Shown one piece after another: positions 32,661-64,000 of a stretch of DNA of 64,000 nucleotides. Both the position numbers and the translations under genes were made by a program. The DNA is from Blastocystis sp. Blastoise. Lineage: Eukaryota; Protista; Bigyra: Opalinata. Under the pieces are notes generated by a model. The model was not told the origin of the DNA. It saw nothing but the letters and a program-made list of their open reading frames with translations, and searched no databases. The stretch spans positions 930,001 to 994,000 of the forward strand of contig JBBPEB010000011.1 in assembly GCA_039096225.1 (NCBI GenBank). The letters are read 5' to 3'. Positions within the stretch are counted from its first letter, which is position 1. Each line of letters starts with the position of its first letter.

Positions 32661-33096
32661 AAACGGTTTAAAGAACTTTTTTTCTACAAAAGAATTCTTG
32701 TGGCGGACCTTAGTTTTTCAAAAGTCAAATTTGGCCTGTATATCAACATGATTCTTTAATGAAAAAGTTGGCCTACCCTAAAAAGGCTTCTTTTCACAAC
32801 ATTGTTGAACTCAATAAAAACTGGCTCTCTAAATATCTCAAGAGAGTTTTTTTGCTGATAAGAAATAATTCTTGGTAATTTGGTTAAGGTGTTGACAAAA
32901 AAATAAATTCTTGTGTTATTTGTTGTTCAAAGCTTAGCTGTGTATAACATAATAAAGTATTTATTTTTTTAAAAGTCAAGCATCATTTACGATACCTTTA
33001 TATTTCAGAAAGAATAAACTTCGACAAATGAAACAAAACAATACCACGTTTGAAACTATTGATTAAATCTTGCTGTTATATAAACAAATTGTATAT

Positions 33097-35803: not shown

Positions 35804-38800
35804 ATGTACGTGAAATTTTTGATTTATTTATTTTTAATCATTTCGGCTTTGGGCCAAGGTATATATATTATGTTTTTTTCCTAAAATTCTTTAGAATGCT
35901 TGTATTATCCTGAAGGAGAAGGGTCAGGAGAGGTATATATTTATTAAAAAACTATTATATATATCAATAGCTTCCACCAGAGGGATATTATGCAGATCCT
36001 GTAGAGGAAGATTATTTCCCTGATTTCTATGATATTTGTCCGATAGGTATGACTTCTTTGTTGTATATATTAACTAATTATTATAGGTTACTATTGTACA
36101 AATGGATGTAAATACCCTTGTCCACCAACTAATTACGGAAGTGAAGAAGGCTTGACAACATCAGAATGTAGTGGAAAGTGCAAAGAGGGTGATTATTATT
36201 TAATTTATTAATTAATAGTATATAGGTTATATTGGTAGCGACGGTCTATATATATTTAAAACAGAAAGTTGTCTAGGAAAATGCAAACAAGGCTATGCTT
36301 GCCCATACAAAGGTATATAATAAATTATTTATGACATCAAATTTCGTTTGTTTAGGAATGACTGATAAAACAATGATACCGTGTAGCACATATGGAGAAA
36401 ATTATTATTGCCCATCTGGAACAGTAAACCCTTTGAAAGTAAAAAATATATTTATATGTATATAATTCAATAAATAGGTAAGTCTGGGATATTATATAAT
36501 TAAAGATACAAATAGCAATGGTATAAGCCAAAGAAAATGCGAAAAAGGTAATTATTGTATAGAAGGTATTAAATATTCTTGTCCATCTGGTTCTTATGGT
36601 AATGAAACTGGTCTTTATAATAATAATTGTAGTGGTAAATGTTTAGAAGGTTATTATTGTTTAGAAGGATCTATATCATCAATTGAAAATGAATGTGGTA
36701 ATGCAAATGTATATTGTCCTTTAGGTTCTTCTTCTCCTATTAATGTTCCTTTAGGTTCTTATTCTATTCCTCTTGATGTTAATTCTACAATTCGTTCTAA
36801 TTTTGTTATTTGTGAAGAAGGTAATTATTGTATAGAAGGTATTAAATATTCTTGTCCATCTGGTTCTTATGGTAATGAAACTGGTCTTTATAATAATAAT
36901 TGTAGTGGTAAATGTTTAGAAGGTTATTATTGTTTAGAAGGATCTATATCATCAATTGAAAAATGAATGTGGTAATGCAAATGTATATTGTCCTTTAGGT
37001 TCTTCTTCTCCTATTAATGTTCCTTTAGGTTCTTATTCTATTCCTCTTGATGTTAATTCTACAATTCGTTCTAATTTTGTTATTTGTGAAGAAGGTAATT
37101 ATTGTATAGAAGGTATTAAATATTCTTGTCCATCTGGTTCTTATGGTAATGAAACTGGTCTTTATAATAATAATTGTAGTGGTAAATGTTTAGAAGGTTA
37201 TTATTGTTTAGAAGGATCTATATCATCAATTGAAAATGAATGTGGTAATGCAAATGTATATTGTCCTTTAGGTTCTTCTTCTCCTATTAATGTTCCTTTA
37301 GGTTCTTATTCTATTCCTCTTGATGTTAATTCTACAATTCGTTCTAATTTTGTTATTTGTGAAGAAGGTAATTATTGTATAGAAGGTATTAAATATTCTT
37401 GTCCATCTGGTTCTTATGGTAATGAAACTGGTCTTTATAATAATAATTGTAGTGGTAAATGTTTAGAAGGTTATTATTGTTTAGAAGGATCTATATCATC
37501 AATTGAAAATGAATGTGGTAATGCAAATGTATATTGTCCTTTAGGTTCTTCTTCTCCTATTAATGTTCCTTTAGGTTCTTATTCTATTCCTCTTGATGTT
37601 AATTCTACAATTCGTTCTAATTTTGTTATTTGTGAAGAAGGTAATTATTGTATAGAAGGTATTAAATATTCTTGTCCATCTGGTTCTTATGGTAATGAAA
37701 CTGGTCTTTATAATAATAATTGTAGTGGTAAATGTTTAGAAGGTTATTATTGTTTAGAAGGATCTATATCATCAATTGAAAATGAATGTGGTAATGCAAA
37801 TGTATATTGTCCTTTAGGTTCTTCTTCTCCTATTAATGTTCCTTTAGGTTCTTATTCTATTCCTCTTGATGTTAATTCTACAATTCGTTCTAATTTTGTT
37901 ATTTGTGAAGAAGGTAATTATTGTATAGAAGGTATTAAATATTCTTGTCCATCTGGTTCTTATGGTAATGAAACTGGTCTTTATAATAATAATTGTAGTG
38001 GTAAATGTTTAGAAGGTTATTATTGTTTAGAAGGATCTATATCATCAATTGAAAATGAATGTGGTAATGCAAATGTATATTGTCCTTTAGGTTCTTCTTC
38101 TCCTATTAATGTTCCTTTAGGTTCTTATTCTATTCCTCTTGATGTTAATTCTACAATTCGTTCTAATTTTGTTATTTGTGAAGAAGGTAATTATTGTATA
38201 GAAGGTATTAAATATTCTTGTCCATCTGGTTCTTATGGTAATGAAACTGGTCTTTATAATAATAATTGTAGTGGTAAATGTTTAGAAGGTTATTATTGTT
38301 TAGAAGGATCTATATCATCAATTGAAAATGAATGTGGTAATGCAAATGTATATTGTCCTTTAGGTTCTTCTTCTCCTATTAATGTTCCTTTAGGTTCTTA
38401 TTCTATTCCTCTTGATGTTAATTCTACAATTCGTTCTAATTTTGTTATTTGTGAAGAAGGTAATTATTGTATAGAAGGTATTAAATATTCTTGTCCATCT
38501 GGTTCTTATGGTAATGAAACTGGTCTTTATAATAATAATTGTAGTGGTAAATGTTTAGAAGGTTATTATTGTTTAGAAGGATCTATATCATCAATTGAAA
38601 ATGAATGTGGTAATGCAAATGTATATTGTCCTTTAGGTTCTTCTTCTCCTATTAATGTTCCTTTAGGTTCTTATTCTATTCCTCTTGATGTTAATTCTAC
38701 AATTCGTTCTAATTTTGTTATTTGTGAAGAAGGTAATTATTGTATAGAAGGTATTAAATATTCTTGTCCATCTGGTTCTTATGGTAATGAAACTGGTCTT

Positions 38801-41800
38801 TATAATAATAATTGTAGTGGTAAATGTTTAGAAGGTTATTATTGTTTAGAAGGATCTATATCATCAATTGAAAATGAATGTGGTAATGCAAATGTATATT
38901 GTCCTTTAGGTTCTTCTTCTCCTATTAATGTTCCTTTAGGTTCTTATTCTATTCCTCTTGATGTTAATTCTACAATTCGTTCTAATTTTGTTATTTGTGA
39001 AGAAGGTAATTATTGTATAGAAGGTATTAAATATTCTTGTCCATCTGGTTCTTATGGTAATGAAACTGGTCTTTATAATAATAATTGTAGTGGTAAATGT
39101 TTAGAAGGTTATTATTGTTTAGAAGGATCTATATCATCAATTGAAAATGAATGTGGTAATGCAAATGTATATTGTCCTTTAGGTTCTTCTTCTCCTATTA
39201 ATGTTCCTTTAGGTTCTTATTCTATTCCTCTTGATGTTAATTCTACAATTCGTTCTAATTTTGTTATTTGTGAAGAAGGTAATTATTGTATAGAAGGTAT
39301 TAAATATTCTTGTCCATCTGGTTCTTATGGTAATGAAACTGGTCTTTATAATAATAATTGTAGTGGTAAATGTTTAGAAGGTTATTATTGTTTAGAAGGA
39401 TCTATATCATCAATTGAAAATGAATGTGGTAATGCAAATGTATATTGTCCTTTAGGTTCTTCTTCTCCTATTAATGTTCCTTTAGGTTCTTATTCTATTC
39501 CTCTTGATGTTAATTCTACAATTCGTTCTAATTTTGTTATTTGTGAAGAAGGTAATTATTGTATAGAAGGTATTAAATATTCTTGTCCATCTGGTTCTTA
39601 TGGTAATGAAACTGGTCTTTATAATAATAATTGTAGTGGTAAATGTTTAGAAGGTTATTATTGTTTAGAAGGATCTATATCATCAATTGAAAATGAATGT
39701 GGTAATGCAAATGTATATTGTCCTTTAGGTTCTTCTTCTCCTATTAATGTTCCTTTAGGTTCTTATTCTATTCCTCTTGATGTTAATTCTACAATTCGTT
39801 CTAATTTTGTTATTTGTGAAGAAGGTAATTATTGTATAGAAGGTATTAAATATTCTTGTCCATCTGGTTCTTATGGTAATGAAACTGGTCTTTATAATAA
39901 TAATTGTAGTGGTAAATGTTTAGAAGGTTATTATTGTTTAGAAGGATCTATATCATCAATTGAAAATGAATGTGGTAATGCAAATGTATATTGTCCTTTA
40001 GGTTCTTCTTCTCCTATTAATGTTCCTTTAGGTTCTTATTCTATTCCTCTTGATGTTAATTCTACAATTCGTTCTAATTTTGTTATTTGTGAAGAAGGTA
40101 ATTATTGTATAGAAGGTATTAAATATTCTTGTCCATCTGGTTCTTATGGTAATGAAACTGGTCTTTATAATAATAATTGTAGTGGTAAATGTTTAGAAGG
40201 TTATTATTGTTTAGAAGGATCTATATCATCAATTGAAAATGAATGTGGTAATGCAAATGTATATTGTCCTTTAGGTTCTTCTTCTCCTATTAATGTTCCT
40301 TTAGGTTCTTATTCTATTCCTCTTGATGTTAATTCTACAATTCGTTCTAATTTTGTTATTTGTGAAGAAGGTAATTATTGTATAGAAGGTATTAAATATT
40401 CTTGTCCATCTGGTTCTTATGGTAATGAAACTGGTCTTTATAATAATAATTGTAGTGGTAAATGTTTAGAAGGTTATTATTGTTTAGAAGGATCTATATC
40501 ATCAATTGAAAATGAATGTGGTAATGCAAATGTATATTGTCCTTTAGGTTCTTCTTCTCCTATTAATGTTCCTTTAGGTTCTTATTCTATTCCTCTTGAT
40601 GTTAATTCTACAATTCGTTCTAATTTTGTTATTTGTGAAGAAGGTAATTATTGTATAGAAGGTATTAAATATTCTTGTCCATCTGGTTCTTATGGTAATG
40701 AAACTGGTCTTTATAATAATAATTGTAGTGGTAAATGTTTAGAAGGTTATTATTGTTTAGAAGGATCTATATCATCAATTGAAAATGAATGTGGTAATGC
40801 AAATGTATATTGTCCTTTAGGTTCTTCTTCTCCTATTAATGTTCCTTTAGGTTCTTATTCTATTCCTCTTGATGTTAATTCTACAATTCGTTCTAATTTT
40901 GTTATTTGTGAAGAAGGTAATTATTGTATAGAAGGTATTAAATATTCTTGTCCATCTGGTTCTTATGGTAATGAAACTGGTCTTTATAATAATAATTGTA
41001 GTGGTAAATGTTTAGAAGGTTATTATTGTTTAGAAGGATCTATATCATCAATTGAAAATGAATGTGGTAATGCAAATGTATATTGTCCTTTAGGTTCTTC
41101 TTCTCCTATTAATGTTCCTTTAGGTTCTTATTCTATTCCTCTTGATGTTAATTCTACAATTCGTTCTAATTTTGTTATTTGTGAAGAAGGTAATTATTGT
41201 ATAGAAGGTATTAAATATTCTTGTCCATCTGGTTCTTATGGTAATGAAACTGGTCTTTATAATAATAATTGTAGTGGTAAATGTTTAGAAGGTTATTATT
41301 GTTTAGAAGGATCTATATCATCAATTGAAAATGAATGTGGTAATGCAAATGTATATTGTCCTTTAGGTTCTTCTTCTCCTATTAATGTTCCTTTAGGTTC
41401 TTATTCTATTCCTCTTGATGTTAATTCTACAATTCGTTCTAATTTTGTTATTTGTGAAGAAGGTAATTATTGTATAGAAGGTATTAAATATTCTTGTCCA
41501 TCTGGTTCTTATGGTAATGAAACTGGTCTTTATAATAATAATTGTAGTGGTAAATGTTTAGAAGGTTATTATTGTTTAGAAGGATCTATATCATCAATTG
41601 AAAATGAATGTGGTAATGCAAATGTATATTGTCCTTTAGGTTCTTCTTCTCCTATTAATGTTCCTTTAGGTTCTTATTCTATTCCTCTTGATGTTAATTC
41701 TACAATTCGTTCTAATTTTGTTATTTGTGAAGAAGGTAATTATTGTATAGAAGGTATTAAATATTCTTGTCCATCTGGTTCTTATGGTAATGAAACTGGT

Positions 41801-44800
41801 CTTTATAATAATAATTGTAGTGGTAAATGTTTAGAAGGTTATTATTGTTTAGAAGGATCTATATCATCAATTGAAAATGAATGTGGTAATGCAAATGTAT
41901 ATTGTCCTTTAGGTTCTTCTTCTCCTATTAATGTTCCTTTAGGTTCTTATTCTATTCCTCTTGATGTTAATTCTACAATTCGTTCTAATTTTGTTATTTG
42001 TGAAGAAGGTAATTATTGTATAGAAGGTATTAAATATTCTTGTCCATCTGGTTCTTATGGTAATGAAACTGGTCTTTATAATAATAATTGTAGTGGTAAA
42101 TGTTTAGAAGGTTATTATTGTTTAGAAGGATCTATATCATCAATTGAAAATGAATGTGGTAATGCAAATGTATATTGTCCTTTAGGTTCTTCTTCTCCTA
42201 TTAATGTTCCTTTAGGTTCTTATTCTATTCCTCTTGATGTTAATTCTACAATTCGTTCTAATTTTGTTATTTGTGAAGAAGGTAATTATTGTATAGAAGG
42301 TATTAAATATTCTTGTCCATCTGGTTCTTATGGTAATGAAACTGGTCTTTATAATAATAATTGTAGTGGTAAATGTTTAGAAGGTTATTATTGTTTAGAA
42401 GGATCTATATCATCAATTGAAAATGAATGTGGTAATGCAAATGTATATTGTCCTTTAGGTTCTTCTTCTCCTATTAATGTTCCTTTAGGTTCTTATTCTA
42501 TTCCTCTTGATGTTAATTCTACAATTCGTTCTAATTTTGTTATTTGTGAAGAAGGTAATTATTGTATAGAAGGTATTAAATATTCTTGTCCATCTGGTTC
42601 TTATGGTAATGAAACTGGTCTTTATAATAATAATTGTAGTGGTAAATGTTTAGAAGGTTATTATTGTTTAGAAGGATCTATATCATCAATTGAAAATGAA
42701 TGTGGTAATGCAAATGTATATTGTCCTTTAGGTTCTTCTTCTCCTATTAATGTTCCTTTAGGTTCTTATTCTATTCCTCTTGATGTTAATTCTACAATTC
42801 GTTCTAATTTTGTTATTTGTGAAGAAGGTAATTATTGTATAGAAGGTATTAAATATTCTTGTCCATCTGGTTCTTATGGTAATGAAACTGGTCTTTATAA
42901 TAATAATTGTAGTGGTAAATGTTTAGAAGGTTATTATTGTTTAGAAGGATCTATATCATCAATTGAAAATGAATGTGGTAATGCAAATGTATATTGTCCT
43001 TTAGGTTCTTCTTCTCCTATTAATGTTCCTTTAGGTTCTTATTCTATTCCTCTTGATGTTAATTCTACAATTCGTTCTAATTTTGTTATTTGTGAAGAAG
43101 GTAATTATTGTATAGAAGGTATTAAATATTCTTGTCCATCTGGTTCTTATGGTAATGAAACTGGTCTTTATAATAATAATTGTAGTGGTAAATGTTTAGA
43201 AGGTTATTATTGTTTAGAAGGATCTATATCATCAATTGAAAATGAATGTGGTAATGCAAATGTATATTGTCCTTTAGGTTCTTCTTCTCCTATTAATGTT
43301 CCTTTAGGTTCTTATTCTATTCCTCTTGATGTTAATTCTACAATTCGTTCTAATTTTGTTATTTGTGAAGAAGGTAATTATTGTATAGAAGGTATTAAAT
43401 ATTCTTGTCCATCTGGTTCTTATGGTAATGAAACTGGTCTTTATAATAATAATTGTAGTGGTAAATGTTTAGAAGGTTATTATTGTTTAGAAGGATCTAT
43501 ATCATCAATTGAAAATGAATGTGGTAATGCAAATGTATATTGTCCTTTAGGTTCTTCTTCTCCTATTAATGTTCCTTTAGGTTCTTATTCTATTCCTCTT
43601 GATGTTAATTCTACAATTCGTTCTAATTTTGTTATTTGTGAAGAAGGTAATTATTGTATAGAAGGTATTAAATATTCTTGTCCATCTGGTTCTTATGGTA
43701 ATGAAACTGGTCTTTATAATAATAATTGTAGTGGTAAATGTTTAGAAGGTTATTATTGTTTAGAAGGATCTATATCATCAATTGAAAATGAATGTGGTAA
43801 TGCAAATGTATATTGTCCTTTAGGTTCTTCTTCTCCTATTAATGTTCCTTTAGGTTCTTATTCTATTCCTCTTGATGTTAATTCTACAATTCGTTCTAAT
43901 TTTGTTATTTGTGAAGAAGGTAATTATTGTATAGAAGGTATTAAATATTCTTGTCCATCTGGTTCTTATGGTAATGAAACTGGTCTTTATAATAATAATT
44001 GTAGTGGTAAATGTTTAGAAGGTTATTATTGTTTAGAAGGATCTATATCATCAATTGAAAATGAATGTGGTAATGCAAATGTATATTGTCCTTTAGGTTC
44101 TTCTTCTCCTATTAATGTTCCTTTAGGTTCTTATTCTATTCCTCTTGATGTTAATTCTACAATTCGTTCTAATTTTGTTATTTGTGAAGAAGGTAATTAT
44201 TGTATAGAAGGTATTAAATATTCTTGTCCATCTGGTTCTTATGGTAATGAAACTGGTCTTTATAATAATAATTGTAGTGGTAAATGTTTAGAAGGTTATT
44301 ATTGTTTAGAAGGATCTATATCATCAATTGAAAATGAATGTGGTAATGCAAATGTATATTGTCCTTTAGGTTCTTCTTCTCCTATTAATGTTCCTTTAGG
44401 TTCTTATTCTATTCCTCTTGATGTTAATTCTACAATTCGTTCTAATTTTGTTATTTGTGAAGAAGGTAATTATTGTATAGAAGGTATTAAATATTCTTGT
44501 CCATCTGGTTCTTATGGTAATGAAACTGGTCTTTATAATAATAATTGTAGTGGTAAATGTTTAGAAGGTTATTATTGTTTAGAAGGATCTATATCATCAA
44601 TTGAAAATGAATGTGGTAATGCAAATGTATATTGTCCTTTAGGTTCTTCTTCTCCTATTAATGTTCCTTTAGGTTCTTATTCTATTCCTCTTGATGTTAA
44701 TTCTACAATTCGTTCTAATTTTGTTATTTGTGAAGAAGGTAATTATTGTATAGAAGGTATTAAATATTCTTGTCCATCTGGTTCTTATGGTAATGAAACT

Positions 44801-47800
44801 GGTCTTTATAATAATAATTGTAGTGGTAAATGTTTAGAAGGTTATTATTGTTTAGAAGGATCTATATCATCAATTGAAAATGAATGTGGTAATGCAAATG
44901 TATATTGTCCTTTAGGTTCTTCTTCTCCTATTAATGTTCCTTTAGGTTCTTATTCTATTCCTCTTGATGTTAATTCTACAATTCGTTCTAATTTTGTTAT
45001 TTGTGAAGAAGGTAATTATTGTATAGAAGGTATTAAATATTCTTGTCCATCTGGTTCTTATGGTAATGAAACTGGTCTTTATAATAATAATTGTAGTGGT
45101 AAATGTTTAGAAGGTTATTATTGTTTAGAAGGATCTATATCATCAATTGAAAATGAATGTGGTAATGCAAATGTATATTGTCCTTTAGGTTCTTCTTCTC
45201 CTATTAATGTTCCTTTAGGTTCTTATTCTATTCCTCTTGATGTTAATTCTACAATTCGTTCTAATTTTGTTATTTGTGAAGAAGGTAATTATTGTATAGA
45301 AGGTATTAAATATTCTTGTCCATCTGGTTCTTATGGTAATGAAACTGGTCTTTATAATAATAATTGTAGTGGTAAATGTTTAGAAGGTTATTATTGTTTA
45401 GAAGGATCTATATCATCAATTGAAAATGAATGTGGTAATGCAAATGTATATTGTCCTTTAGGTTCTTCTTCTCCTATTAATGTTCCTTTAGGTTCTTATT
45501 CTATTCCTCTTGATGTTAATTCTACAATTCGTTCTAATTTTGTTATTTGTGAAGAAGGTAATTATTGTATAGAAGGTATTAAATATTCTTGTCCATCTGG
45601 TTCTTATGGTAATGAAACTGGTCTTTATAATAATAATTGTAGTGGTAAATGTTTAGAAGGTTATTATTGTTTAGAAGGATCTATATCATCAATTGAAAAT
45701 GAATGTGGTAATGCAAATGTATATTGTCCTTTAGGTTCTTCTTCTCCTATTAATGTTCCTTTAGGTTCTTATTCTATTCCTCTTGATGTTAATTCTACAA
45801 TTCGTTCTAATTTTGTTATTTGTGAAGAAGGTAATTATTGTATAGAAGGTATTAAATATTCTTGTCCATCTGGTTCTTATGGTAATGAAACTGGTCTTTA
45901 TAATAATAATTGTAGTGGTAAATGTTTAGAAGGTTATTATTGTTTAGAAGGATCTATATCATCAATTGAAAATGAATGTGGTAATGCAAATGTATATTGT
46001 CCTTTAGGTTCTTCTTCTCCTATTAATGTTCCTTTAGGTTCTTATTCTATTCCTCTTGATGTTAATTCTACAATTCGTTCTAATTTTGTTATTTGTGAAG
46101 AAGGTAATTATTGTATAGAAGGTATTAAATATTCTTGTCCATCTGGTTCTTATGGTAATGAAACTGGTCTTTATAATAATAATTGTAGTGGTAAATGTTT
46201 AGAAGGTTATTATTGTTTAGAAGGATCTATATCATCAATTGAAAATGAATGTGGTAATGCAAATGTATATTGTCCTTTAGGTTCTTCTTCTCCTATTAAT
46301 GTTCCTTTAGGTTCTTATTCTATTCCTCTTGATGTTAATTCTACAATTCGTTCTAATTTTGTTATTTGTGAAGAAGGTAATTATTGTATAGAAGGTATTA
46401 AATATTCTTGTCCATCTGGTTCTTATGGTAATGAAACTGGTCTTTATAATAATAATTGTAGTGGTAAATGTTTAGAAGGTTATTATTGTTTAGAAGGATC
46501 TATATCATCAATTGAAAATGAATGTGGTAATGCAAATGTATATTGTCCTTTAGGTTCTTCTTCTCCTATTAATGTTCCTTTAGGTTCTTATTCTATTCCT
46601 CTTGATGTTAATTCTACAATTCGTTCTAATTTTGTTATTTGTGAAGAAGGTAATTATTGTATAGAAGGTATTAAATATTCTTGTCCATCTGGTTCTTATG
46701 GTAATGAAACTGGTCTTTATAATAATAATTGTAGTGGTAAATGTTTAGAAGGTTATTATTGTTTAGAAGGATCTATATCATCAATTGAAAATGAATGTGG
46801 TAATGCAAATGTATATTGTCCTTTAGGTTCTTCTTCTCCTATTAATGTTCCTTTAGGTTCTTATTCTATTCCTCTTGATGTTAATTCTACAATTCGTTCT
46901 AATTTTGTTATTTGTGAAGAAGGTAATTATTGTATAGAAGGTATTAAATATTCTTGTCCATCTGGTTCTTATGGTAATGAAACTGGTCTTTATAATAATA
47001 ATTGTAGTGGTAAATGTTTAGAAGGTTATTATTGTTTAGAAGGATCTATATCATCAATTGAAAATGAATGTGGTAATGCAAATGTATATTGTCCTTTAGG
47101 TTCTTCTTCTCCTATTAATGTTCCTTTAGGTTCTTATTCTATTCCTCTTGATGTTAATTCTACAATTCGTTCTAATTTTGTTATTTGTGAAGAAGGTAAT
47201 TATTGTATAGAAGGTATTAAATATTCTTGTCCATCTGGTTCTTATGGTAATGAAACTGGTCTTTATAATAATAATTGTAGTGGTAAATGTTTAGAAGGTT
47301 ATTATTGTTTAGAAGGATCTATATCATCAATTGAAAATGAATGTGGTAATGCAAATGTATATTGTCCTTTAGGTTCTTCTTCTCCTATTAATGTTCCTTT
47401 AGGTTCTTATTCTATTCCTCTTGATGTTAATTCTACAATTCGTTCTAATTTTGTTATTTGTGAAGAAGGTAATTATTGTATAGAAGGTATTAAATATTCT
47501 TGTCCATCTGGTTCTTATGGTAATGAAACTGGTCTTTATAATAATAATTGTAGTGGTAAATGTTTAGAAGGTTATTATTGTTTAGAAGGATCTATATCAT
47601 CAATTGAAAATGAATGTGGTAATGCAAATGTATATTGTCCTTTAGGTTCTTCTTCTCCTATTAATGTTCCTTTAGGTTCTTATTCTATTCCTCTTGATGT
47701 TAATTCTACAATTCGTTCTAATTTTGTTATTTGTGAAGAAGGTAATTATTGTATAGAAGGTATTAAATATTCTTGTCCATCTGGTTCTTATGGTAATGAA

Positions 47801-50800: not shown

Positions 50801-53800
50801 GAAACTGGTCTTTATAATAATAATTGTAGTGGTAAATGTTTAGAAGGTTATTATTGTTTAGAAGGATCTATATCATCAATTGAAAATGAATGTGGTAATG
50901 CAAATGTATATTGTCCTTTAGGTTCTTCTTCTCCTATTAATGTTCCTTTAGGTTCTTATTCTATTCCTCTTGATGTTAATTCTACAATTCGTTCTAATTT
51001 TGTTATTTGTGAAGAAGGTAATTATTGTATAGAAGGTATTAAATATTCTTGTCCATCTGGTTCTTATGGTAATGAAACTGGTCTTTATAATAATAATTGT
51101 AGTGGTAAATGTTTAGAAGGTTATTATTGTTTAGAAGGATCTATATCATCAATTGAAAATGAATGTGGTAATGCAAATGTATATTGTCCTTTAGGTTCTT
51201 CTTCTCCTATTAATGTTCCTTTAGGTTCTTATTCTATTCCTCTTGATGTTAATTCTACAATTCGTTCTAATTTTGTTATTTGTGAAGAAGGTAATTATTG
51301 TATAGAAGGTATTAAATATTCTTGTCCATCTGGTTCTTATGGTAATGAAACTGGTCTTTATAATAATAATTGTAGTGGTAAATGTTTAGAAGGTTATTAT
51401 TGTTTAGAAGGATCTATATCATCAATTGAAAATGAATGTGGTAATGCAAATGTATATTGTCCTTTAGGTTCTTCTTCTCCTATTAATGTTCCTTTAGGTT
51501 CTTATTCTATTCCTCTTGATGTTAATTCTACAATTCGTTCTAATTTTGTTATTTGTGAAGAAGGTAATTATTGTATAGAAGGTATTAAATATTCTTGTCC
51601 ATCTGGTTCTTATGGTAATGAAACTGGTCTTTATAATAATAATTGTAGTGGTAAATGTTTAGAAGGTTATTATTGTTTAGAAGGATCTATATCATCAATT
51701 GAAAATGAATGTGGTAATGCAAATGTATATTGTCCTTTAGGTTCTTCTTCTCCTATTAATGTTCCTTTAGGTTCTTATTCTATTCCTCTTGATGTTAATT
51801 CTACAATTCGTTCTAATTTTGTTATTTGTGAAGAAGGTAATTATTGTATAGAAGGTATTAAATATTCTTGTCCATCTGGTTCTTATGGTAATGAAACTGG
51901 TCTTTATAATAATAATTGTAGTGGTAAATGTTTAGAAGGTTATTATTGTTTAGAAGGATCTATATCATCAATTGAAAATGAATGTGGTAATGCAAATGTA
52001 TATTGTCCTTTAGGTTCTTCTTCTCCTATTAATGTTCCTTTAGGTTCTTATTCTATTCCTCTTGATGTTAATTCTACAATTCGTTCTAATTTTGTTATTT
52101 GTGAAGAAGGTAATTATTGTATAGAAGGTATTAAATATTCTTGTCCATCTGGTTCTTATGGTAATGAAACTGGTCTTTATAATAATAATTGTAGTGGTAA
52201 ATGTTTAGAAGGTTATTATTGTTTAGAAGGATCTATATCATCAATTGAAAATGAATGTGGTAATGCAAATGTATATTGTCCTTTAGGTTCTTCTTCTCCT
52301 ATTAATGTTCCTTTAGGTTCTTATTCTATTCCTCTTGATGTTAATTCTACAATTCGTTCTAATTTTGTTATTTGTGAAGAAGGTAATTATTGTATAGAAG
52401 GTATTAAATATTCTTGTCCATCTGGTTCTTATGGTAATGAAACTGGTCTTTATAATAATAATTGTAGTGGTAAATGTTTAGAAGGTTATTATTGTTTAGA
52501 AGGATCTATATCATCAATTGAAAATGAATGTGGTAATGCAAATGTATATTGTCCTTTAGGTTCTTCTTCTCCTATTAATGTTCCTTTAGGTTCTTATTCT
52601 ATTCCTCTTGATGTTAATTCTACAATTCGTTCTAATTTTGTTATTTGTGAAGAAGGTAATTATTGTATAGAAGGTATTAAATATTCTTGTCCATCTGGTT
52701 CTTATGGTAATGAAACTGGTCTTTATAATAATAATTGTAGTGGTAAATGTTTAGAAGGTTATTATTGTTTAGAAGGATCTATATCATCAATTGAAAATGA
52801 ATGTGGTAATGCAAATGTATATTGTCCTTTAGGTTCTTCTTCTCCTATTAATGTTCCTTTAGGTTCTTATTCTATTCCTCTTGATGTTAATTCTACAATT
52901 CGTTCTAATTTTGTTATTTGTGAAGAAGGTAATTATTGTATAGAAGGTATTAAATATTCTTGTCCATCTGGTTCTTATGGTAATGAAACTGGTCTTTATA
53001 ATAATAATTGTAGTGGTAAATGTTTAGAAGGTTATTATTGTTTAGAAGGATCTATATCATCAATTGAAAATGAATGTGGTAATGCAAATGTATATTGTCC
53101 TTTAGGTTCTTCTTCTCCTATTAATGTTCCTTTAGGTTCTTATTCTATTCCTCTTGATGTTAATTCTACAATTCGTTCTAATTTTGTTATTTGTGAAGAA
53201 GGTAATTATTGTATAGAAGGTATTAAATATTCTTGTCCATCTGGTTCTTATGGTAATGAAACTGGTCTTTATAATAATAATTGTAGTGGTAAATGTTTAG
53301 AAGGTTATTATTGTTTAGAAGGATCTATATCATCAATTGAAAATGAATGTGGTAATGCAAATGTATATTGTCCTTTAGGTTCTTCTTCTCCTATTAATGT
53401 TCCTTTAGGTTCTTATTCTATTCCTCTTGATGTTAATTCTACAATTCGTTCTAATTTTGTTATTTGTGAAGAAGGTAATTATTGTATAGAAGGTATTAAA
53501 TATTCTTGTCCATCTGGTTCTTATGGTAATGAAACTGGTCTTTATAATAATAATTGTAGTGGTAAATGTTTAGAAGGTTATTATTGTTTAGAAGGATCTA
53601 TATCATCAATTGAAAATGAATGTGGTAATGCAAATGTATATTGTCCTTTAGGTTCTTCTTCTCCTATTAATGTTCCTTTAGGTTCTTATTCTATTCCTCT
53701 TGATGTTAATTCTACAATTCGTTCTAATTTTGTTATTTGTGAAGAAGGTAATTATTGTATAGAAGGTATTAAATATTCTTGTCCATCTGGTTCTTATGGT

Positions 53801-56800
53801 AATGAAACTGGTCTTTATAATAATAATTGTAGTGGTAAATGTTTAGAAGGTTATTATTGTTTAGAAGGATCTATATCATCAATTGAAAATGAATGTGGTA
53901 ATGCAAATGTATATTGTCCTTTAGGTTCTTCTTCTCCTATTAATGTTCCTTTAGGTTCTTATTCTATTCCTCTTGATGTTAATTCTACAATTCGTTCTAA
54001 TTTTGTTATTTGTGAAGAAGGTAATTATTGTATAGAAGGTATTAAATATTCTTGTCCATCTGGTTCTTATGGTAATGAAACTGGTCTTTATAATAATAAT
54101 TGTAGTGGTAAATGTTTAGAAGGTTATTATTGTTTAGAAGGATCTATATCATCAATTGAAAATGAATGTGGTAATGCAAATGTATATTGTCCTTTAGGTT
54201 CTTCTTCTCCTATTAATGTTCCTTTAGGTTCTTATTCTATTCCTCTTGATGTTAATTCTACAATTCGTTCTAATTTTGTTATTTGTGAAGAAGGTAATTA
54301 TTGTATAGAAGGTATTAAATATTCTTGTCCATCTGGTTCTTATGGTAATGAAACTGGTCTTTATAATAATAATTGTAGTGGTAAATGTTTAGAAGGTTAT
54401 TATTGTTTAGAAGGATCTATATCATCAATTGAAAATGAATGTGGTAATGCAAATGTATATTGTCCTTTAGGTTCTTCTTCTCCTATTAATGTTCCTTTAG
54501 GTTCTTATTCTATTCCTCTTGATGTTAATTCTACAATTCGTTCTAATTTTGTTATTTGTGAAGAAGGTAATTATTGTATAGAAGGTATTAAATATTCTTG
54601 TCCATCTGGTTCTTATGGTAATGAAACTGGTCTTTATAATAATAATTGTAGTGGTAAATGTTTAGAAGGTTATTATTGTTTAGAAGGATCTATATCATCA
54701 ATTGAAAATGAATGTGGTAATGCAAATGTATATTGTCCTTTAGGTTCTTCTTCTCCTATTAATGTTCCTTTAGGTTCTTATTCTATTCCTCTTGATGTTA
54801 ATTCTACAATTCGTTCTAATTTTGTTATTTGTGAAGAAGGTAATTATTGTATAGAAGGTATTAAATATTCTTGTCCATCTGGTTCTTATGGTAATGAAAC
54901 TGGTCTTTATAATAATAATTGTAGTGGTAAATGTTTAGAAGGTTATTATTGTTTAGAAGGATCTATATCATCAATTGAAAATGAATGTGGTAATGCAAAT
55001 GTATATTGTCCTTTAGGTTCTTCTTCTCCTATTAATGTTCCTTTAGGTTCTTATTCTATTCCTCTTGATGTTAATTCTACAATTCGTTCTAATTTTGTTA
55101 TTTGTGAAGAAGGTAATTATTGTATAGAAGGTATTAAATATTCTTGTCCATCTGGTTCTTATGGTAATGAAACTGGTCTTTATAATAATAATTGTAGTGG
55201 TAAATGTTTAGAAGGTTATTATTGTTTAGAAGGATCTATATCATCAATTGAAAATGAATGTGGTAATGCAAATGTATATTGTCCTTTAGGTTCTTCTTCT
55301 CCTATTAATGTTCCTTTAGGTTCTTATTCTATTCCTCTTGATGTTAATTCTACAATTCGTTCTAATTTTGTTATTTGTGAAGAAGGTAATTATTGTATAG
55401 AAGGTATTAAATATTCTTGTCCATCTGGTTCTTATGGTAATGAAACTGGTCTTTATAATAATAATTGTAGTGGTAAATGTTTAGAAGGTTATTATTGTTT
55501 AGAAGGATCTATATCATCAATTGAAAATGAATGTGGTAATGCAAATGTATATTGTCCTTTAGGTTCTTCTTCTCCTATTAATGTTCCTTTAGGTTCTTAT
55601 TCTATTCCTCTTGATGTTAATTCTACAATTCGTTCTAATTTTGTTATTTGTGAAGAAGGTAATTATTGTATAGAAGGTATTAAATATTCTTGTCCATCTG
55701 GTTCTTATGGTAATGAAACTGGTCTTTATAATAATAATTGTAGTGGTAAATGTTTAGAAGGTTATTATTGTTTAGAAGGATCTATATCATCAATTGAAAA
55801 TGAATGTGGTAATGCAAATGTATATTGTCCTTTAGGTTCTTCTTCTCCTATTAATGTTCCTTTAGGTTCTTATTCTATTCCTCTTGATGTTAATTCTACA
55901 ATTCGTTCTAATTTTGTTATTTGTGAAGAAGGTAATTATTGTATAGAAGGTATTAAATATTCTTGTCCATCTGGTTCTTATGGTAATGAAACTGGTCTTT
56001 ATAATAATAATTGTAGTGGTAAATGTTTAGAAGGTTATTATTGTTTAGAAGGATCTATATCATCAATTGAAAATGAATGTGGTAATGCAAATGTATATTG
56101 TCCTTTAGGTTCTTCTTCTCCTATTAATGTTCCTTTAGGTTCTTATTCTATTCCTCTTGATGTTAATTCTACAATTCGTTCTAATTTTGTTATTTGTGAA
56201 GAAGGTAATTATTGTATAGAAGGTATTAAATATTCTTGTCCATCTGGTTCTTATGGTAATGAAACTGGTCTTTATAATAATAATTGTAGTGGTAAATGTT
56301 TAGAAGGTTATTATTGTTTAGAAGGATCTATATCATCAATTGAAAATGAATGTGGTAATGCAAATGTATATTGTCCTTTAGGTTCTTCTTCTCCTATTAA
56401 TGTTCCTTTAGGTTCTTATTCTATTCCTCTTGATGTTAATTCTACAATTCGTTCTAATTTTGTTATTTGTGAAGAAGGTAATTATTGTATAGAAGGTATT
56501 AAATATTCTTGTCCATCTGGTTCTTATGGTAATGAAACTGGTCTTTATAATAATAATTGTAGTGGTAAATGTTTAGAAGGTTATTATTGTTTAGAAGGAT
56601 CTATATCATCAATTGAAAATGAATGTGGTAATGCAAATGTATATTGTCCTTTAGGTTCTTCTTCTCCTATTAATGTTCCTTTAGGTTCTTATTCTATTCC
56701 TCTTGATGTTAATTCTACAATTCGTTCTAATTTTGTTATTTGTGAAGAAGGTAATTATTGTATAGAAGGTATTAAATATTCTTGTCCATCTGGTTCTTAT

Positions 56801-59800
56801 GGTAATGAAACTGGTCTTTATAATAATAATTGTAGTGGTAAATGTTTAGAAGGTTATTATTGTTTAGAAGGATCTATATCATCAATTGAAAATGAATGTG
56901 GTAATGCAAATGTATATTGTCCTTTAGGTTCTTCTTCTCCTATTAATGTTCCTTTAGGTTCTTATTCTATTCCTCTTGATGTTAATTCTACAATTCGTTC
57001 TAATTTTGTTATTTGTGAAGAAGGTAATTATTGTATAGAAGGTATTAAATATTCTTGTCCATCTGGTTCTTATGGTAATGAAACTGGTCTTTATAATAAT
57101 AATTGTAGTGGTAAATGTTTAGAAGGTTATTATTGTTTAGAAGGATCTATATCATCAATTGAAAATGAATGTGGTAATGCAAATGTATATTGTCCTTTAG
57201 GTTCTTCTTCTCCTATTAATGTTCCTTTAGGTTCTTATTCTATTCCTCTTGATGTTAATTCTACAATTCGTTCTAATTTTGTTATTTGTGAAGAAGGTAA
57301 TTATTGTATAGAAGGTATTAAATATTCTTGTCCATCTGGTTCTTATGGTAATGAAACTGGTCTTTATAATAATAATTGTAGTGGTAAATGTTTAGAAGGT
57401 TATTATTGTTTAGAAGGATCTATATCATCAATTGAAAATGAATGTGGTAATGCAAATGTATATTGTCCTTTAGGTTCTTCTTCTCCTATTAATGTTCCTT
57501 TAGGTTCTTATTCTATTCCTCTTGATGTTAATTCTACAATTCGTTCTAATTTTGTTATTTGTGAAGAAGGTAATTATTGTATAGAAGGTATTAAATATTC
57601 TTGTCCATCTGGTTCTTATGGTAATGAAACTGGTCTTTATAATAATAATTGTAGTGGTAAATGTTTAGAAGGTTATTATTGTTTAGAAGGATCTATATCA
57701 TCAATTGAAAATGAATGTGGTAATGCAAATGTATATTGTCCTTTAGGTTCTTCTTCTCCTATTAATGTTCCTTTAGGTTCTTATTCTATTCCTCTTGATG
57801 TTAATTCTACAATTCGTTCTAATTTTGTTATTTGTGAAGAAGGTAATTATTGTATAGAAGGTATTAAATATTCTTGTCCATCTGGTTCTTATGGTAATGA
57901 AACTGGTCTTTATAATAATAATTGTAGTGGTAAATGTTTAGAAGGTTATTATTGTTTAGAAGGATCTATATCATCAATTGAAAATGAATGTGGTAATGCA
58001 AATGTATATTGTCCTTTAGGTTCTTCTTCTCCTATTAATGTTCCTTTAGGTTCTTATTCTATTCCTCTTGATGTTAATTCTACAATTCGTTCTAATTTTG
58101 TTATTTGTGAAGAAGGTAATTATTGTATAGAAGGTATTAAATATTCTTGTCCATCTGGTTCTTATGGTAATGAAACTGGTCTTTATAATAATAATTGTAG
58201 TGGTAAATGTTTAGAAGGTTATTATTGTTTAGAAGGATCTATATCATCAATTGAAAATGAATGTGGTAATGCAAATGTATATTGTCCTTTAGGTTCTTCT
58301 TCTCCTATTAATGTTCCTTTAGGTTCTTATTCTATTCCTCTTGATGTTAATTCTACAATTCGTTCTAATTTTGTTATTTGTGAAGAAGGTAATTATTGTA
58401 TAGAAGGTATTAAATATTCTTGTCCATCTGGTTCTTATGGTAATGAAACTGGTCTTTATAATAATAATTGTAGTGGTAAATGTTTAGAAGGTTATTATTG
58501 TTTAGAAGGATCTATATCATCAATTGAAAATGAATGTGGTAATGCAAATGTATATTGTCCTTTAGGTTCTTCTTCTCCTATTAATGTTCCTTTAGGTTCT
58601 TATTCTATTCCTCTTGATGTTAATTCTACAATTCGTTCTAATTTTGTTATTTGTGAAGAAGGTAATTATTGTATAGAAGGTATTAAATATTCTTGTCCAT
58701 CTGGTTCTTATGGTAATGAAACTGGTCTTTATAATAATAATTGTAGTGGTAAATGTTTAGAAGGTTATTATTGTTTAGAAGGATCTATATCATCAATTGA
58801 AAATGAATGTGGTAATGCAAATGTATATTGTCCTTTAGGTTCTTCTTCTCCTATTAATGTTCCTTTAGGTTCTTATTCTATTCCTCTTGATGTTAATTCT
58901 ACAATTCGTTCTAATTTTGTTATTTGTGAAGAAGGTAATTATTGTATAGAAGGTATTAAATATTCTTGTCCATCTGGTTCTTATGGTAATGAAACTGGTC
59001 TTTATAATAATAATTGTAGTGGTAAATGTTTAGAAGGTTATTATTGTTTAGAAGGATCTATATCATCAATTGAAAATGAATGTGGTAATGCAAATGTATA
59101 TTGTCCTTTAGGTTCTTCTTCTCCTATTAATGTTCCTTTAGGTTCTTATTCTATTCCTCTTGATGTTAATTCTACAATTCGTTCTAATTTTGTTATTTGT
59201 GAAGAAGGTAATTATTGTATAGAAGGTATTAAATATTCTTGTCCATCTGGTTCTTATGGTAATGAAACTGGTCTTTATAATAATAATTGTAGTGGTAAAT
59301 GTTTAGAAGGTTATTATTGTTTAGAAGGATCTATATCATCAATTGAAAATGAATGTGGTAATGCAAATGTATATTGTCCTTTAGGTTCTTCTTCTCCTAT
59401 TAATGTTCCTTTAGGTTCTTATTCTATTCCTCTTGATGTTAATTCTACAATTCGTTCTAATTTTGTTATTTGTGAAGAAGGTAATTATTGTATAGAAGGT
59501 ATTAAATATTCTTGTCCATCTGGTTCTTATGGTAATGAAACTGGTCTTTATAATAATAATTGTAGTGGTAAATGTTTAGAAGGTTATTATTGTTTAGAAG
59601 GATCTATATCATCAATTGAAAATGAATGTGGTAATGCAAATGTATATTGTCCTTTAGGTTCTTCTTCTCCTATTAATGTTCCTTTAGGTTCTTATTCTAT
59701 TCCTCTTGATGTTAATTCTACAATTCGTTCTAATTTTGTTATTTGTGAAGAAGGTAATTATTGTATAGAAGGTATTAAATATTCTTGTCCATCTGGTTCT

Positions 59801-62800
59801 TATGGTAATGAAACTGGTCTTTATAATAATAATTGTAGTGGTAAATGTTTAGAAGGTTATTATTGTTTAGAAGGATCTATATCATCAATTGAAAATGAAT
59901 GTGGTAATGCAAATGTATATTGTCCTTTAGGTTCTTCTTCTCCTATTAATGTTCCTTTAGGTTCTTATTCTATTCCTCTTGATGTTAATTCTACAATTCG
60001 TTCTAATTTTGTTATTTGTGAAGAAGGTAATTATTGTATAGAAGGTATTAAATATTCTTGTCCATCTGGTTCTTATGGTAATGAAACTGGTCTTTATAAT
60101 AATAATTGTAGTGGTAAATGTTTAGAAGGTTATTATTGTTTAGAAGGATCTATATCATCAATTGAAAATGAATGTGGTAATGCAAATGTATATTGTCCTT
60201 TAGGTTCTTCTTCTCCTATTAATGTTCCTTTAGGTTCTTATTCTATTCCTCTTGATGTTAATTCTACAATTCGTTCTAATTTTGTTATTTGTGAAGAAGG
60301 TAATTATTGTATAGAAGGTATTAAATATTCTTGTCCATCTGGTTCTTATGGTAATGAAACTGGTCTTTATAATAATAATTGTAGTGGTAAATGTTTAGAA
60401 GGTTATTATTGTTTAGAAGGATCTATATCATCAATTGAAAATGAATGTGGTAATGCAAATGTATATTGTCCTTTAGGTTCTTCTTCTCCTATTAATGTTC
60501 CTTTAGGTTCTTATTCTATTCCTCTTGATGTTAATTCTACAATTCGTTCTAATTTTGTTATTTGTGAAGAAGGTAATTATTGTATAGAAGGTATTAAATA
60601 TTCTTGTCCATCTGGTTCTTATGGTAATGAAACTGGTCTTTATAATAATAATTGTAGTGGTAAATGTTTAGAAGGTTATTATTGTTTAGAAGGATCTATA
60701 TCATCAATTGAAAATGAATGTGGTAATGCAAATGTATATTGTCCTTTAGGTTCTTCTTCTCCTATTAATGTTCCTTTAGGTTCTTATTCTATTCCTCTTG
60801 ATGTTAATTCTACAATTCGTTCTAATTTTGTTATTTGTGAAGAAGGTAATTATTGTATAGAAGGTATTAAATATTCTTGTCCATCTGGTTCTTATGGTAA
60901 TGAAACTGGTCTTTATAATAATAATTGTAGTGGTAAATGTTTAGAAGGTTATTATTGTTTAGAAGGATCTATATCATCAATTGAAAATGAATGTGGTAAT
61001 GCAAATGTATATTGTCCTTTAGGTTCTTCTTCTCCTATTAATGTTCCTTTAGGTTCTTATTCTATTCCTCTTGATGTTAATTCTACAATTCGTTCTAATT
61101 TTGTTATTTGTGAAGAAGGTAATTATTGTATAGAAGGTATTAAATATTCTTGTCCATCTGGTTCTTATGGTAATGAAACTGGTCTTTATAATAATAATTG
61201 TAGTGGTAAATGTTTAGAAGGTTATTATTGTTTAGAAGGATCTATATCATCAATTGAAAATGAATGTGGTAATGCAAATGTATATTGTCCTTTAGGTTCT
61301 TCTTCTCCTATTAATGTTCCTTTAGGTTCTTATTCTATTCCTCTTGATGTTAATTCTACAATTCGTTCTAATTTTGTTATTTGTGAAGAAGGTAATTATT
61401 GTATAGAAGGTATTAAATATTCTTGTCCATCTGGTTCTTATGGTAATGAAACTGGTCTTTATAATAATAATTGTAGTGGTAAATGTTTAGAAGGTTATTA
61501 TTGTTTAGAAGGATCTATATCATCAATTGAAAATGAATGTGGTAATGCAAATGTATATTGTCCTTTAGGTTCTTCTTCTCCTATTAATGTTCCTTTAGGT
61601 TCTTATTCTATTCCTCTTGATGTTAATTCTACAATTCGTTCTAATTTTGTTATTTGTGAAGAAGGTAATTATTGTATAGAAGGTATTAAATATTCTTGTC
61701 CATCTGGTTCTTATGGTAATGAAACTGGTCTTTATAATAATAATTGTAGTGGTAAATGTTTAGAAGGTTATTATTGTTTAGAAGGATCTATATCATCAAT
61801 TGAAAATGAATGTGGTAATGCAAATGTATATTGTCCTTTAGGTTCTTCTTCTCCTATTAATGTTCCTTTAGGTTCTTATTCTATTCCTCTTGATGTTAAT
61901 TCTACAATTCGTTCTAATTTTGTTATTTGTGAAGAAGGTAATTATTGTATAGAAGGTATTAAATATTCTTGTCCATCTGGTTCTTATGGTAATGAAACTG
62001 GTCTTTATAATAATAATTGTAGTGGTAAATGTTTAGAAGGTTATTATTGTTTAGAAGGATCTATATCATCAATTGAAAATGAATGTGGTAATGCAAATGT
62101 ATATTGTCCTTTAGGTTCTTCTTCTCCTATTAATGTTCCTTTAGGTTCTTATTCTATTCCTCTTGATGTTAATTCTACAATTCGTTCTAATTTTGTTATT
62201 TGTGAAGAAGGTAATTATTGTATAGAAGGTATTAAATATTCTTGTCCATCTGGTTCTTATGGTAATGAAACTGGTCTTTATAATAATAATTGTAGTGGTA
62301 AATGTTTAGAAGGTTATTATTGTTTAGAAGGATCTATATCATCAATTGAAAATGAATGTGGTAATGCAAATGTATATTGTCCTTTAGGTTCTTCTTCTCC
62401 TATTAATGTTCCTTTAGGTTCTTATTCTATTCCTCTTGATGTTAATTCTACAATTCGTTCTAATTTTGTTATTTGTGAAGAAGGTAATTATTGTATAGAA
62501 GGTATTAAATATTCTTGTCCATCTGGTTCTTATGGTAATGAAACTGGTCTTTATAATAATAATTGTAGTGGTAAATGTTTAGAAGGTTATTATTGTTTAG
62601 AAGGATCTATATCATCAATTGAAAATGAATGTGGTAATGCAAATGTATATTGTCCTTTAGGTTCTTCTTCTCCTATTAATGTTCCTTTAGGTTCTTATTC
62701 TATTCCTCTTGATGTTAATTCTACAATTCGTTCTAATTTTGTTATTTGTGAAGAAGGTAATTATTGTATAGAAGGTATTAAATATTCTTGTCCATCTGGT

Positions 62801-64000
62801 TCTTATGGTAATGAAACTGGTCTTTATAATAATAATTGTAGTGGTAAATGTTTAGAAGGTTATTATTGTTTAGAAGGATCTATATCATCAATTGAAAATG
62901 AATGTGGTAATGCAAATGTATATTGTCCTTTAGGTTCTTCTTCTCCTATTAATGTTCCTTTAGGTTCTTATTCTATTCCTCTTGATGTTAATTCTACAAT
63001 TCGTTCTAATTTTGTTATTTGTGAAGAAGGTAATTATTGTATAGAAGGTATTAAATATTCTTGTCCATCTGGTTCTTATGGTAATGAAACTGGTCTTTAT
63101 AATAATAATTGTAGTGGTAAATGTTTAGAAGGTTATTATTGTTTAGAAGGATCTATATCATCAATTGAAAATGAATGTGGTAATGCAAATGTATATTGTC
63201 CTTTAGGTTCTTCTTCTCCTATTAATGTTCCTTTAGGTTCTTATTCTATTCCTCTTGATGTTAATTCTACAATTCGTTCTAATTTTGTTATTTGTGAAGA
63301 AGGTAATTATTGTATAGAAGGTATTAAATATTCTTGTCCATCTGGTTCTTATGGTAATGAAACTGGTCTTTATAATAATAATTGTAGTGGTAAATGTTTA
63401 GAAGGTTATTATTGTTTAGAAGGATCTATATCATCAATTGAAAATGAATGTGGTAATGCAAATGTATATTGTCCTTTAGGTTCTTCTTCTCCTATTAATG
63501 TTCCTTTAGGTTCTTATTCTATTCCTCTTGATGTTAATTCTACAATTCGTTCTAATTTTGTTATTTGTGAAGAAGGTAATTATTGTATAGAAGGTATTAA
63601 ATATTCTTGTCCATCTGGTTCTTATGGTAATGAAACTGGTCTTTATAATAATAATTGTAGTGGTAAATGTTTAGAAGGTTATTATTGTTTAGAAGGATCT
63701 ATATCATCAATTGAAAATGAATGTGGTAATGCAAATGTATATTGTCCTTTAGGTTCTTCTTCTCCTATTAATGTTCCTTTAGGTTCTTATTCTATTCCTC
63801 TTGATGTTAATTCTACAATTCGTTCTAATTTTGTTATTTGTGAAGAAGGTAATTATTGTATAGAAGGTATTAAATATTCTTGTCCATCTGGTTCTTATGG
63901 TAATGAAACTGGTCTTTATAATAATAATTGTAGTGGTAAATGTTTAGAAGGTTATTATTGTTTAGAAGGATCTATATCATCAATTGAAAATGAATGTGGT
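35804..64000 (+). CDS. Giant secreted Cys-rich tandem-repeat glycoprotein (>9,100 aa, 3'-incomplete), with one +1 frameshift in repeat copy 2 as assembled
   Basis: Exons 35804-35858 (MYVKFLIYLFLIISALGQ, signal-peptide-like), 35895-35932, 35971-36046, 36087-36188, 36226-36312, 36356-36438 and 36478-end. Introns are 36-43 nt GT-AG and all junctions are in frame. The last exon reads into a stop-free 91-aa unit: GNYCIEGIKYSCPSGSYGNETGLYNNNCSGKCLEGYYCLEGSISSIENECGNANVYCPLGSSSPINVPLGSYSIPLDVNSTIRSNFVICEE. Confidence 0.85.
36547..64000 (+). repeat. 273-bp coding tandem array, ~100.5 copies in the window, apparently identical
   Basis: Units start at 36547, 36820, 37094 and then every 273 bp to 63848. 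The printed lines recur exactly every 5460 bp (20 units; lines 37021, 42481, 47941, 53401, 58861), so there are no net indels after copy 2. Confidence 0.98.

What the first reader, a model, noticed from the sequence alone, without database searches (positions are those of the whole stretch)
35804..64000. Hidden giant gene: >100 identical 91-aa, 8-Cys modules in one >27-kb exon (a ~1-MDa or larger secreted filament-like glycoprotein)
Seen: a signal-peptide exon and five more short exons splice in frame into a 273-bp array whose reading frame has no stops. Each unit has 8 Cys and three N-glycosylation sequons (NET, NCS, NST), giving >800 Cys and ~300 sequons in the window alone. The ORF track misses it because the unit has no Met and the frame runs off the end. 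Known: CxxGxYC...CPxGxY repeats (GCC2/GCC3, ephrin-receptor-like) form disulfide-bonded extracellular rods in protist surface and wall proteins. Inference: a very long, acidic, glycosylated, protease-resistant fibre for a surface coat, cyst wall or tether, with length set by repeat number. I do not recognise it as a described protein.
Basis: partly seen in the sequence, partly recalled or inferred. Interest (0 to 1): 0.9.

Follow-up and report, generated by a model that had tools for sequence, protein, structure and literature searches.

The report
Giant cysteine-repeat surface rod of Blastocystis
A tortoise-gut Blastocystis has two genes that each stack about 200 or more identical disulfide-bonded modules behind a secretion signal, human Blastocystis has a gene of the same design, and these rod-like proteins are testable candidates for the unidentified fibres of the cell's surface coat, although the copy in this window has a one-base frameshift that may or may not be real.

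Summary
The array is real: seven exons splice in frame into identical 273-bp units (91 aa, 8 Cys, three sequons), 215 copies to the contig end. One claim fails: a +A in copy 2 gives TGA at 36964, so as assembled the protein stops at 309 aa. All four indels in the two arrays are +1 homopolymer slips in a Nanopore assembly, so error is likelier (~60%), but reads could not settle it. The organism is tortoise Blastocystis (Rus-B). A second gene (C18; noted earlier by this scan) has a different head, the identical unit, and stays in frame for 13,387 codons. Neither 3' end is assembled. The module is a widespread stramenopile repeat, normally 4-12 diverged copies; it does not hit PF07699 but folds like the Chlamydomonas mastigoneme Mst1 cysteine-rich rod. 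Human subtype-3 strain DL has a homologous gene, sharing five intron positions, with 62 or more near-identical copies of a different unit; in human-gut contigs such arrays lead into cadherin, TIG and multi-pass membrane regions. Best reading: a length-variable, glycosylated extracellular stalk of 2 MDa or more, candidate surface-coat fibre. Expression and function are unshown.

The parts
35804..35858 (+). Exon 1: ATG and hydrophobic signal peptide (18 codons)
   Evidence: signal peptide judged by eye, no predictor run
35895..35932 (+). Exon 2
35971..36046 (+). Exon 3, acidic; flanking introns (phase 0, phase 1) match the DL homologue
36087..36188 (+). Exon 4, diverged Cys module
   Evidence: z 4.7 to the matching DL exon
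36226..36312 (+). Exon 5, diverged Cys module
   Evidence: z 4.2
36356..36438 (+). Exon 6, diverged Cys module
   Evidence: z 3.6
36478..64000 (+). Exon 7, giant exon; runs on to the contig end (C34:1,025,233)
36545..64000 (+). Array of identical 273-bp / 91-aa 8-Cys units (100.6 in the window, 215 to the contig end)
36959..36966 (+). Extra A in copy 2 followed by TGA; real or assembly error, unresolved
33097..35260 (-). Divergently oriented neighbour carrying one diverged copy of the module (52% over 77 aa); full exon structure not worked out

Best explanation
A protein-coding gene for a giant extracellular stalk. Steps: (1) the signal peptide sends the chain into the ER (inferred from sequence); (2) each 91-aa unit folds as a small beta-rich module of the growth-factor-receptor/TNFR-like cysteine-rich class, probably with four disulfides and up to three N-glycans (fold predicted, bonds and glycans inferred); (3) 215 or more units make a rod of at least 19,700 aa, about 2.1 MDa and roughly 0.75 micrometre if the rise per residue equals that of Mst1 (inferred); (4) the unassembled tail most likely resembles that of the human-subtype homologues (diverged modules, cadherin and TIG repeats, multi-pass membrane region), so the rod would hold the short unique head far from the cell or be shed into the fibrillar coat (inferred; about 55% for this tail, about 20% for an unanchored Cys-Cys cap); (5) unequal crossing-over and gene conversion amplify and homogenise the unit within and between the two paralogues (inferred from identical units behind different heads). 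The +A in copy 2 is taken as a residual homopolymer error (about 60%).
For: Splice model in frame; five intron positions and phases shared with the DL gene; codon-position bias and rarity of an open frame; C18 sister gene in frame for 13,387 codons through identical units; exact 91-aa period in homologues; model pLDDT 98, best PDB match Mst1, E 2e-6, Z 7.4, rmsd 4.5 over 178; Mst1 cysteine-rich domain is a 26-nm, 26-disulfide filament element (PMC11015965); DL array of 62 or more copies; cadherin/TIG/membrane tails in human-gut contigs; all four indels in 411 copies are +1 homopolymer extensions, one site hit twice, in a Nanopore/Flye assembly (PMC10690189); the coat is filamentous and carbohydrate-bearing (PMC6115916).
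Against: As assembled the frame stops in copy 2, only about 420 bp from unique sequence where polishing should work best. No RNA or peptide evidence (one search is uninformative). No 3' end in the assembly; no cadherin match in this genome. Z 7.4 is below the level the tool calls clear, and a shared fold shows no function. The tails in human-gut contigs were assembled across a collapsed repeat and could be mis-paired with heads. A reported outer-layer thickness of 0.2-0.35 micrometre in other isolates (PMC4222385) is shorter than the extended rod.
Confidence: 0.55

Rival explanations
1. The +A is real: this gene makes only a 309-aa secreted protein or is a (perhaps heterozygous) null allele, its array kept identical by conversion with the C18 gene, which supplies the giant protein.
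For: The insertion is in copy 2, next to unique sequence; edge copies often escape homogenisation (own knowledge); a frame-preserving five-base variant survives in one C18 copy, so polishing did not erase rare variants; the same +A occurs in a C18 copy.
Against: Frameshifting indels (4) outnumber substitution events (2) across 112 kb, the pattern of Nanopore residual error; the DL array from the same pipeline also has a frameshifted copy; head exons and splice sites are intact.
Confidence: 0.28
2. The gene is real but the copy number is inflated or the identity is a polishing product; the true array is tens of copies.
For: Both contigs end inside the array; racon and three rounds of Polypolish can pull repeat copies towards a consensus (mechanism from own knowledge); the one public run with the sequence shows no depth excess over the array (depth 2-3, contigs only, possibly RNA).
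Against: Two separate contig ends carry 196 and 215 copies; the same pipeline kept 31 variant types among 61 DL copies and a rare variant on C18.
Confidence: 0.12
3. The array is a satellite born from a coding module, now non-coding (for example a subtelomeric block) and not translated at either locus.
For: Perfect homogeneity, contig-end position, no annotated protein from it among the database hits.
Against: In-frame fusion behind two different signal-peptide heads at different points of the unit; 143 consecutive stop-free copies on C18; same design in human subtype 3.
Confidence: 0.05

Closest known systems
Chlamydomonas MST1 mastigoneme protein, cysteine-rich domain (PDB 8WA2, 9B4H, 8TX1; PMC11015965)
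   Same: Best structural match of the three-unit model; elongated disulfide-rich growth-factor-receptor-type rod with N-glycans, secreted, forms extracellular filament
   Different: 13-19% identity; MST1 has one 678-aa domain of diverged repeats plus Ig-like domains and a polyproline helix; Blastocystis has no flagella or hairs
Unnamed stramenopile 8-Cys 91-aa repeat proteins (oomycetes, diatoms, Cantina, metagenomes; some auto-named 'ephrin type A/B receptor-like')
   Same: Same module and spacing, 40-66% identity per unit, signal peptides common
   Different: 4-12 copies about 43-48% alike within a protein, often ending in a Cys-Cys cap; here 215 or more identical copies
Blastocystis ST3 DL WA538_004986 (KAK8815864.1, hypothetical, 4710 aa) and ST3/ST4-like metagenome homologues
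   Same: Signal exon, five shared intron positions, giant exon with a homogenised 8-Cys array; two different heads share one unit
   Different: Amplified unit is 104 aa (two 52-aa half-modules, 41-45% to our residues 33-90); copies keep variants; tail of cadherin, TIG and membrane helices is visible there, missing here
CRMP / GCC2-GCC3 / 'cast multi-domain' proteins of apicomplexans and ciliates (PMC9670195)
   Same: Long Cys-repeat ectodomain of the EGFR-like class; giant relatives at 25-33% identity; human-subtype homologue has several C-terminal membrane helices
   Different: No PF07699 hit in the unit; no Kringle or MAR domain seen; diverged repeats; membrane region untestable here

Membership tests
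PF07699 Ephrin_rec_like (GCC2/GCC3) | Match above the Pfam cut-off | tested here: not met
   No hit for three units; 2 of 85 aligned homologue segments hit
PF07699 Ephrin_rec_like (GCC2/GCC3) | Same fold class | tested here: inconclusive
   TM 0.54-0.67 to predicted PF07699 proteins; EphB2/EphA2 Cys-rich domain Z 4.2-5.2 over about 50 residues
MST1-like mastigoneme proteins | Growth-factor-receptor-type cysteine-rich rod | tested here: met
   Foldseek E 2e-6, TMq 0.46-0.57; VIA Z 7.4; fold-level only
MST1-like mastigoneme proteins | Sequence homology to MST1 | tested here: not met
   Profile of alignment A1 finds no PDB sequence at E up to 1
MST1-like mastigoneme proteins | C-terminal polyproline helix; filament assembly | not testable with these tools
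   3' end not in the assembly
CRMP | Multiple C-terminal transmembrane helices | not testable with these tools
   Tail missing; present in the human-gut homologue L067
CRMP | Kringle or MAR domain (in some members) | tested here: inconclusive
   No Pfam hit at the start of exon 7; the short head exons were not scanned, nothing Kringle-like by eye
Stramenopile 91-aa 8-Cys repeat family (unnamed) | Eight conserved Cys and Gly spacing, 91-aa period | tested here: met
   Near-invariant Cys/Gly columns; exact 91-aa period in P0266 and P0250
Stramenopile 91-aa 8-Cys repeat family (unnamed) | C-terminal Cys-Cys cap of the unanchored subgroup | tested here: inconclusive
   Cap profile hits other genes (best C4:788221, E 5e-5), none next to the arrays; only 150 of 418 candidates scored

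The most novel reading that the evidence does not exclude
Blastocystis from tortoises to humans keeps a pair of paralogous genes whose cysteine-module stalks are amplified to tens or hundreds of copies and homogenised between loci, producing multi-megadalton, near-micrometre surface fibres whose repeat number sets coat depth; in this strain they would be among the longest proteins known and are missing from the annotation.
Probability: 0.3. Interest if true: 0.85.

Novelty: new variant of a known kind. Interest (0 to 1): 0.62.

Why it matters
The filamentous, glycosylated surface coat of Blastocystis varies among isolates and has been linked to adhesion and to resistance against an antimicrobial peptide (PMC6115916), but I found no paper naming its protein fibres. 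These genes give specific candidates, unit peptides for proteomics and a copy-number prediction, including in human subtype 3. They are invisible or truncated in current annotations and collapse in short-read assemblies. Two genes with different heads and one identical coding array is also a clear case of inter-locus concerted evolution.

Tried and rejected
Reads: the only run found (X1, contigs, RNA only a guess) has perfect pieces at 33083-33287, 36654-36758 and 36839-36956 at depth 2-3, none over the A-run or a splice junction; it shows neither transcription nor copy number. Cap, cadherin and homologue-tail queries found no continuation. Pfam hits to the unit (RNase A, zinc finger, toxin 28 and others) are all below cut-off and were rejected. 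No annotated protein with this unit was found at 250-796 aa, at 4,900-15,700 aa or among the top 150 representatives; lengths in between were covered only by the representative search. The other tortoise assembly ('Blastoise') could not be fetched. Head-to-head orthology (C34 or C18 against the two ST3 heads) is unresolved. A slippage on/off switch was considered unlikely: a run of four to five A is short. The joined spliced protein was built only inside scripts from the held DNA to check the frame; it was not sent to any search tool, and searches used single exons by reference.

Full report
Observation. The window holds a 273-bp tandem array from about 36541 to its end, 100.6 copies. Ninety-eight units are identical; copy 2 is 274 bp. 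The unit reads as 91 aa with 8 Cys, three sequons, no Met and pI 4.3. All 91 codons end in A or T, against GC3 of 0.25 in the head exons and 0.11 in pyruvate carboxylase, and only 0.26% of shuffled units have an open periodic frame. Six AT-rich GT-AG introns of 36-43 nt join an ATG at 35804 with a signal-like peptide to the array in frame. As assembled, an extra A at 36959-36963 gives TGA at 36964-36966, and the product is 309 aa. So the statement that the frame has no stops is wrong for the spliced gene, though true for the copies downstream.

Source. The window's pyruvate carboxylase differs by one residue from that of Blastocystis sp. 'Blastoise'. Genome size 33.34 Mb matches tortoise strain Rus-B of Lind et al., assembled from Nanopore reads with Flye and polished with racon, Polypolish and POLCA (PMC10690189). 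The identification as Rus-B is an inference from size and relatedness.

Beyond the window. The array runs 58.7 kb to the end of contig C34: 215 copies, with a second +1 in copy 157. A second gene on C18 (ATG at 819,462, five introns, a different head) enters the same unit at another point (offset 93) and stays open for 13,387 codons; it has 196 copies to its contig end, two +1 slips, one substitution and one frame-preserving five-base variant. An exact count gives 411 copies in the genome, all accounted for, so neither tail is assembled. Earlier readers of this scan noted the C18 gene and the frameshift; I checked both.

Is the frameshift real? All four indels are one-base homopolymer extensions, the unit's A4 run being hit in both arrays, and they outnumber substitution events; the DL array from the same pipeline also has a frameshifted copy. 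That favours error. Against this, copy 2 is near unique sequence, and a rare variant survived polishing on C18. The one public run available does not cover the site. I put error at about 60%. A GTAAAT donor at 36908 and an acceptor at 36998 could in principle skip the insertion in frame, but the 91-nt intron is longer than the others here and has no support.

The module. Homologues are abundant in oomycetes, diatoms, other stramenopiles and metagenomes; a profile finds 1,484 representatives at E up to 1e-30, many of them more distant Cys-repeat giants. Close relatives have 4-12 copies about 43-48% alike, often with an exact 91-aa period, and many end in a conserved Cys-Cys cap without a membrane helix. 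The unit does not hit PF07699 or any PDB sequence. AlphaFold2 on three units gives pLDDT 98, pTM 0.83, short beta strands. The best solved match is the cysteine-rich part of Chlamydomonas Mst1 (E 2e-6; Z 7.4, rmsd 4.5 over 178 residues), then Eph, Elapor1, class C GPCR and TNFR cysteine-rich domains. In Mst1, 678 residues span 26 nm with 26 disulfides and dimerise along the filament (PMC11015965). Scaling gives about 3.5 nm per unit and about 0.75 micrometre for 215 units; mass at least 2.1 MDa before glycans. These are extrapolations.

Human Blastocystis has the same design. The top profile hit is WA538_004986 of subtype-3 strain DL. Its locus has a signal exon, short exons and a giant exon with at least 62 copies of a 312-bp, 104-aa, 8-Cys unit in 31 variant types. 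That unit is two half-modules 41-45% identical to our residues 33-90, so the amplification is independent. Five introns of the DL head match the last five of ours in phase (0,1,1,1,0) and position, with exon-by-exon z of 3.6-4.7; this is independent support for the splice model. In human-gut metagenome contigs the array collapses to one or two copies, or the contig starts at it; two different heads lead into the same unit, and then into diverged 91-aa modules, cadherin repeats, TIG repeats and several membrane helices. Joins across a collapsed repeat may mis-pair heads and tails. No cadherin match was found in this genome, which fits a tail missing from the assembly or a different tail.

Mechanism and verdict. 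Shown: coding signature, splice model with conserved introns, two identical arrays behind different heads, a parallel array in human subtype 3, a confident rod-type fold. Inferred: secretion, disulfide and glycan load, length, membrane anchor, role in the coat, concerted evolution. The coat is described as loose carbohydrate-bearing fibrils that vary among isolates (PMC6115916), and my searches found no paper assigning proteins to it or describing these arrays; the library lacks most subscription journals. It works like an Mst1- or CRMP-type cysteine-rich extracellular rod but is not filed under either. Rated a new variant of a known kind, interest 0.62: a real and testable lead, marked down because this locus is broken as assembled, no expression is shown and the tail is unknown.

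Noticed in passing
window:7901-11431 +: Intronless pyruvate carboxylase; the 'Blastoise' record differs by one residue and lies on a contig about 304 kb longer, which may span the array; a second near-identical copy is annotated there (WA158_005121).
   Followed up: partly
window:33097-35260 - and G000:C18 about 797,000-798,700 -: The head-to-head neighbour with one diverged module has a look-alike about 21 kb upstream of the C18 gene (69% over 156 nt, similar C-terminal exon), suggesting old paralogous segments.
   Followed up: partly
G000:C18:858,905-858,913: One copy carries five clustered substitutions that keep the frame, probably a real variant or conversion tract.
   Followed up: partly
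window:36475-36483: The acceptor of intron 6 is followed directly by a GTAAGT donor-like sequence.
   Followed up: no
window:36654-36758: Run X1 has a 135-nt contig that closes a 105-nt loop within the unit at depth 3, probably a library chimera.
   Followed up: partly
G000:C4:788221, C25:800861, C25:948293, C26:697227, C26:1072591: Other long open frames (824-3,560 aa) weakly match the Cys-Cys cap profile; C4 is the likeliest ordinary family member.
   Followed up: no
L061:5001-24184 (Blastocystis DL): The NCBI model WA538_004986 starts at an internal Met, missing the signal exons, and stops at a frameshifted copy although the array goes on.
   Followed up: yes
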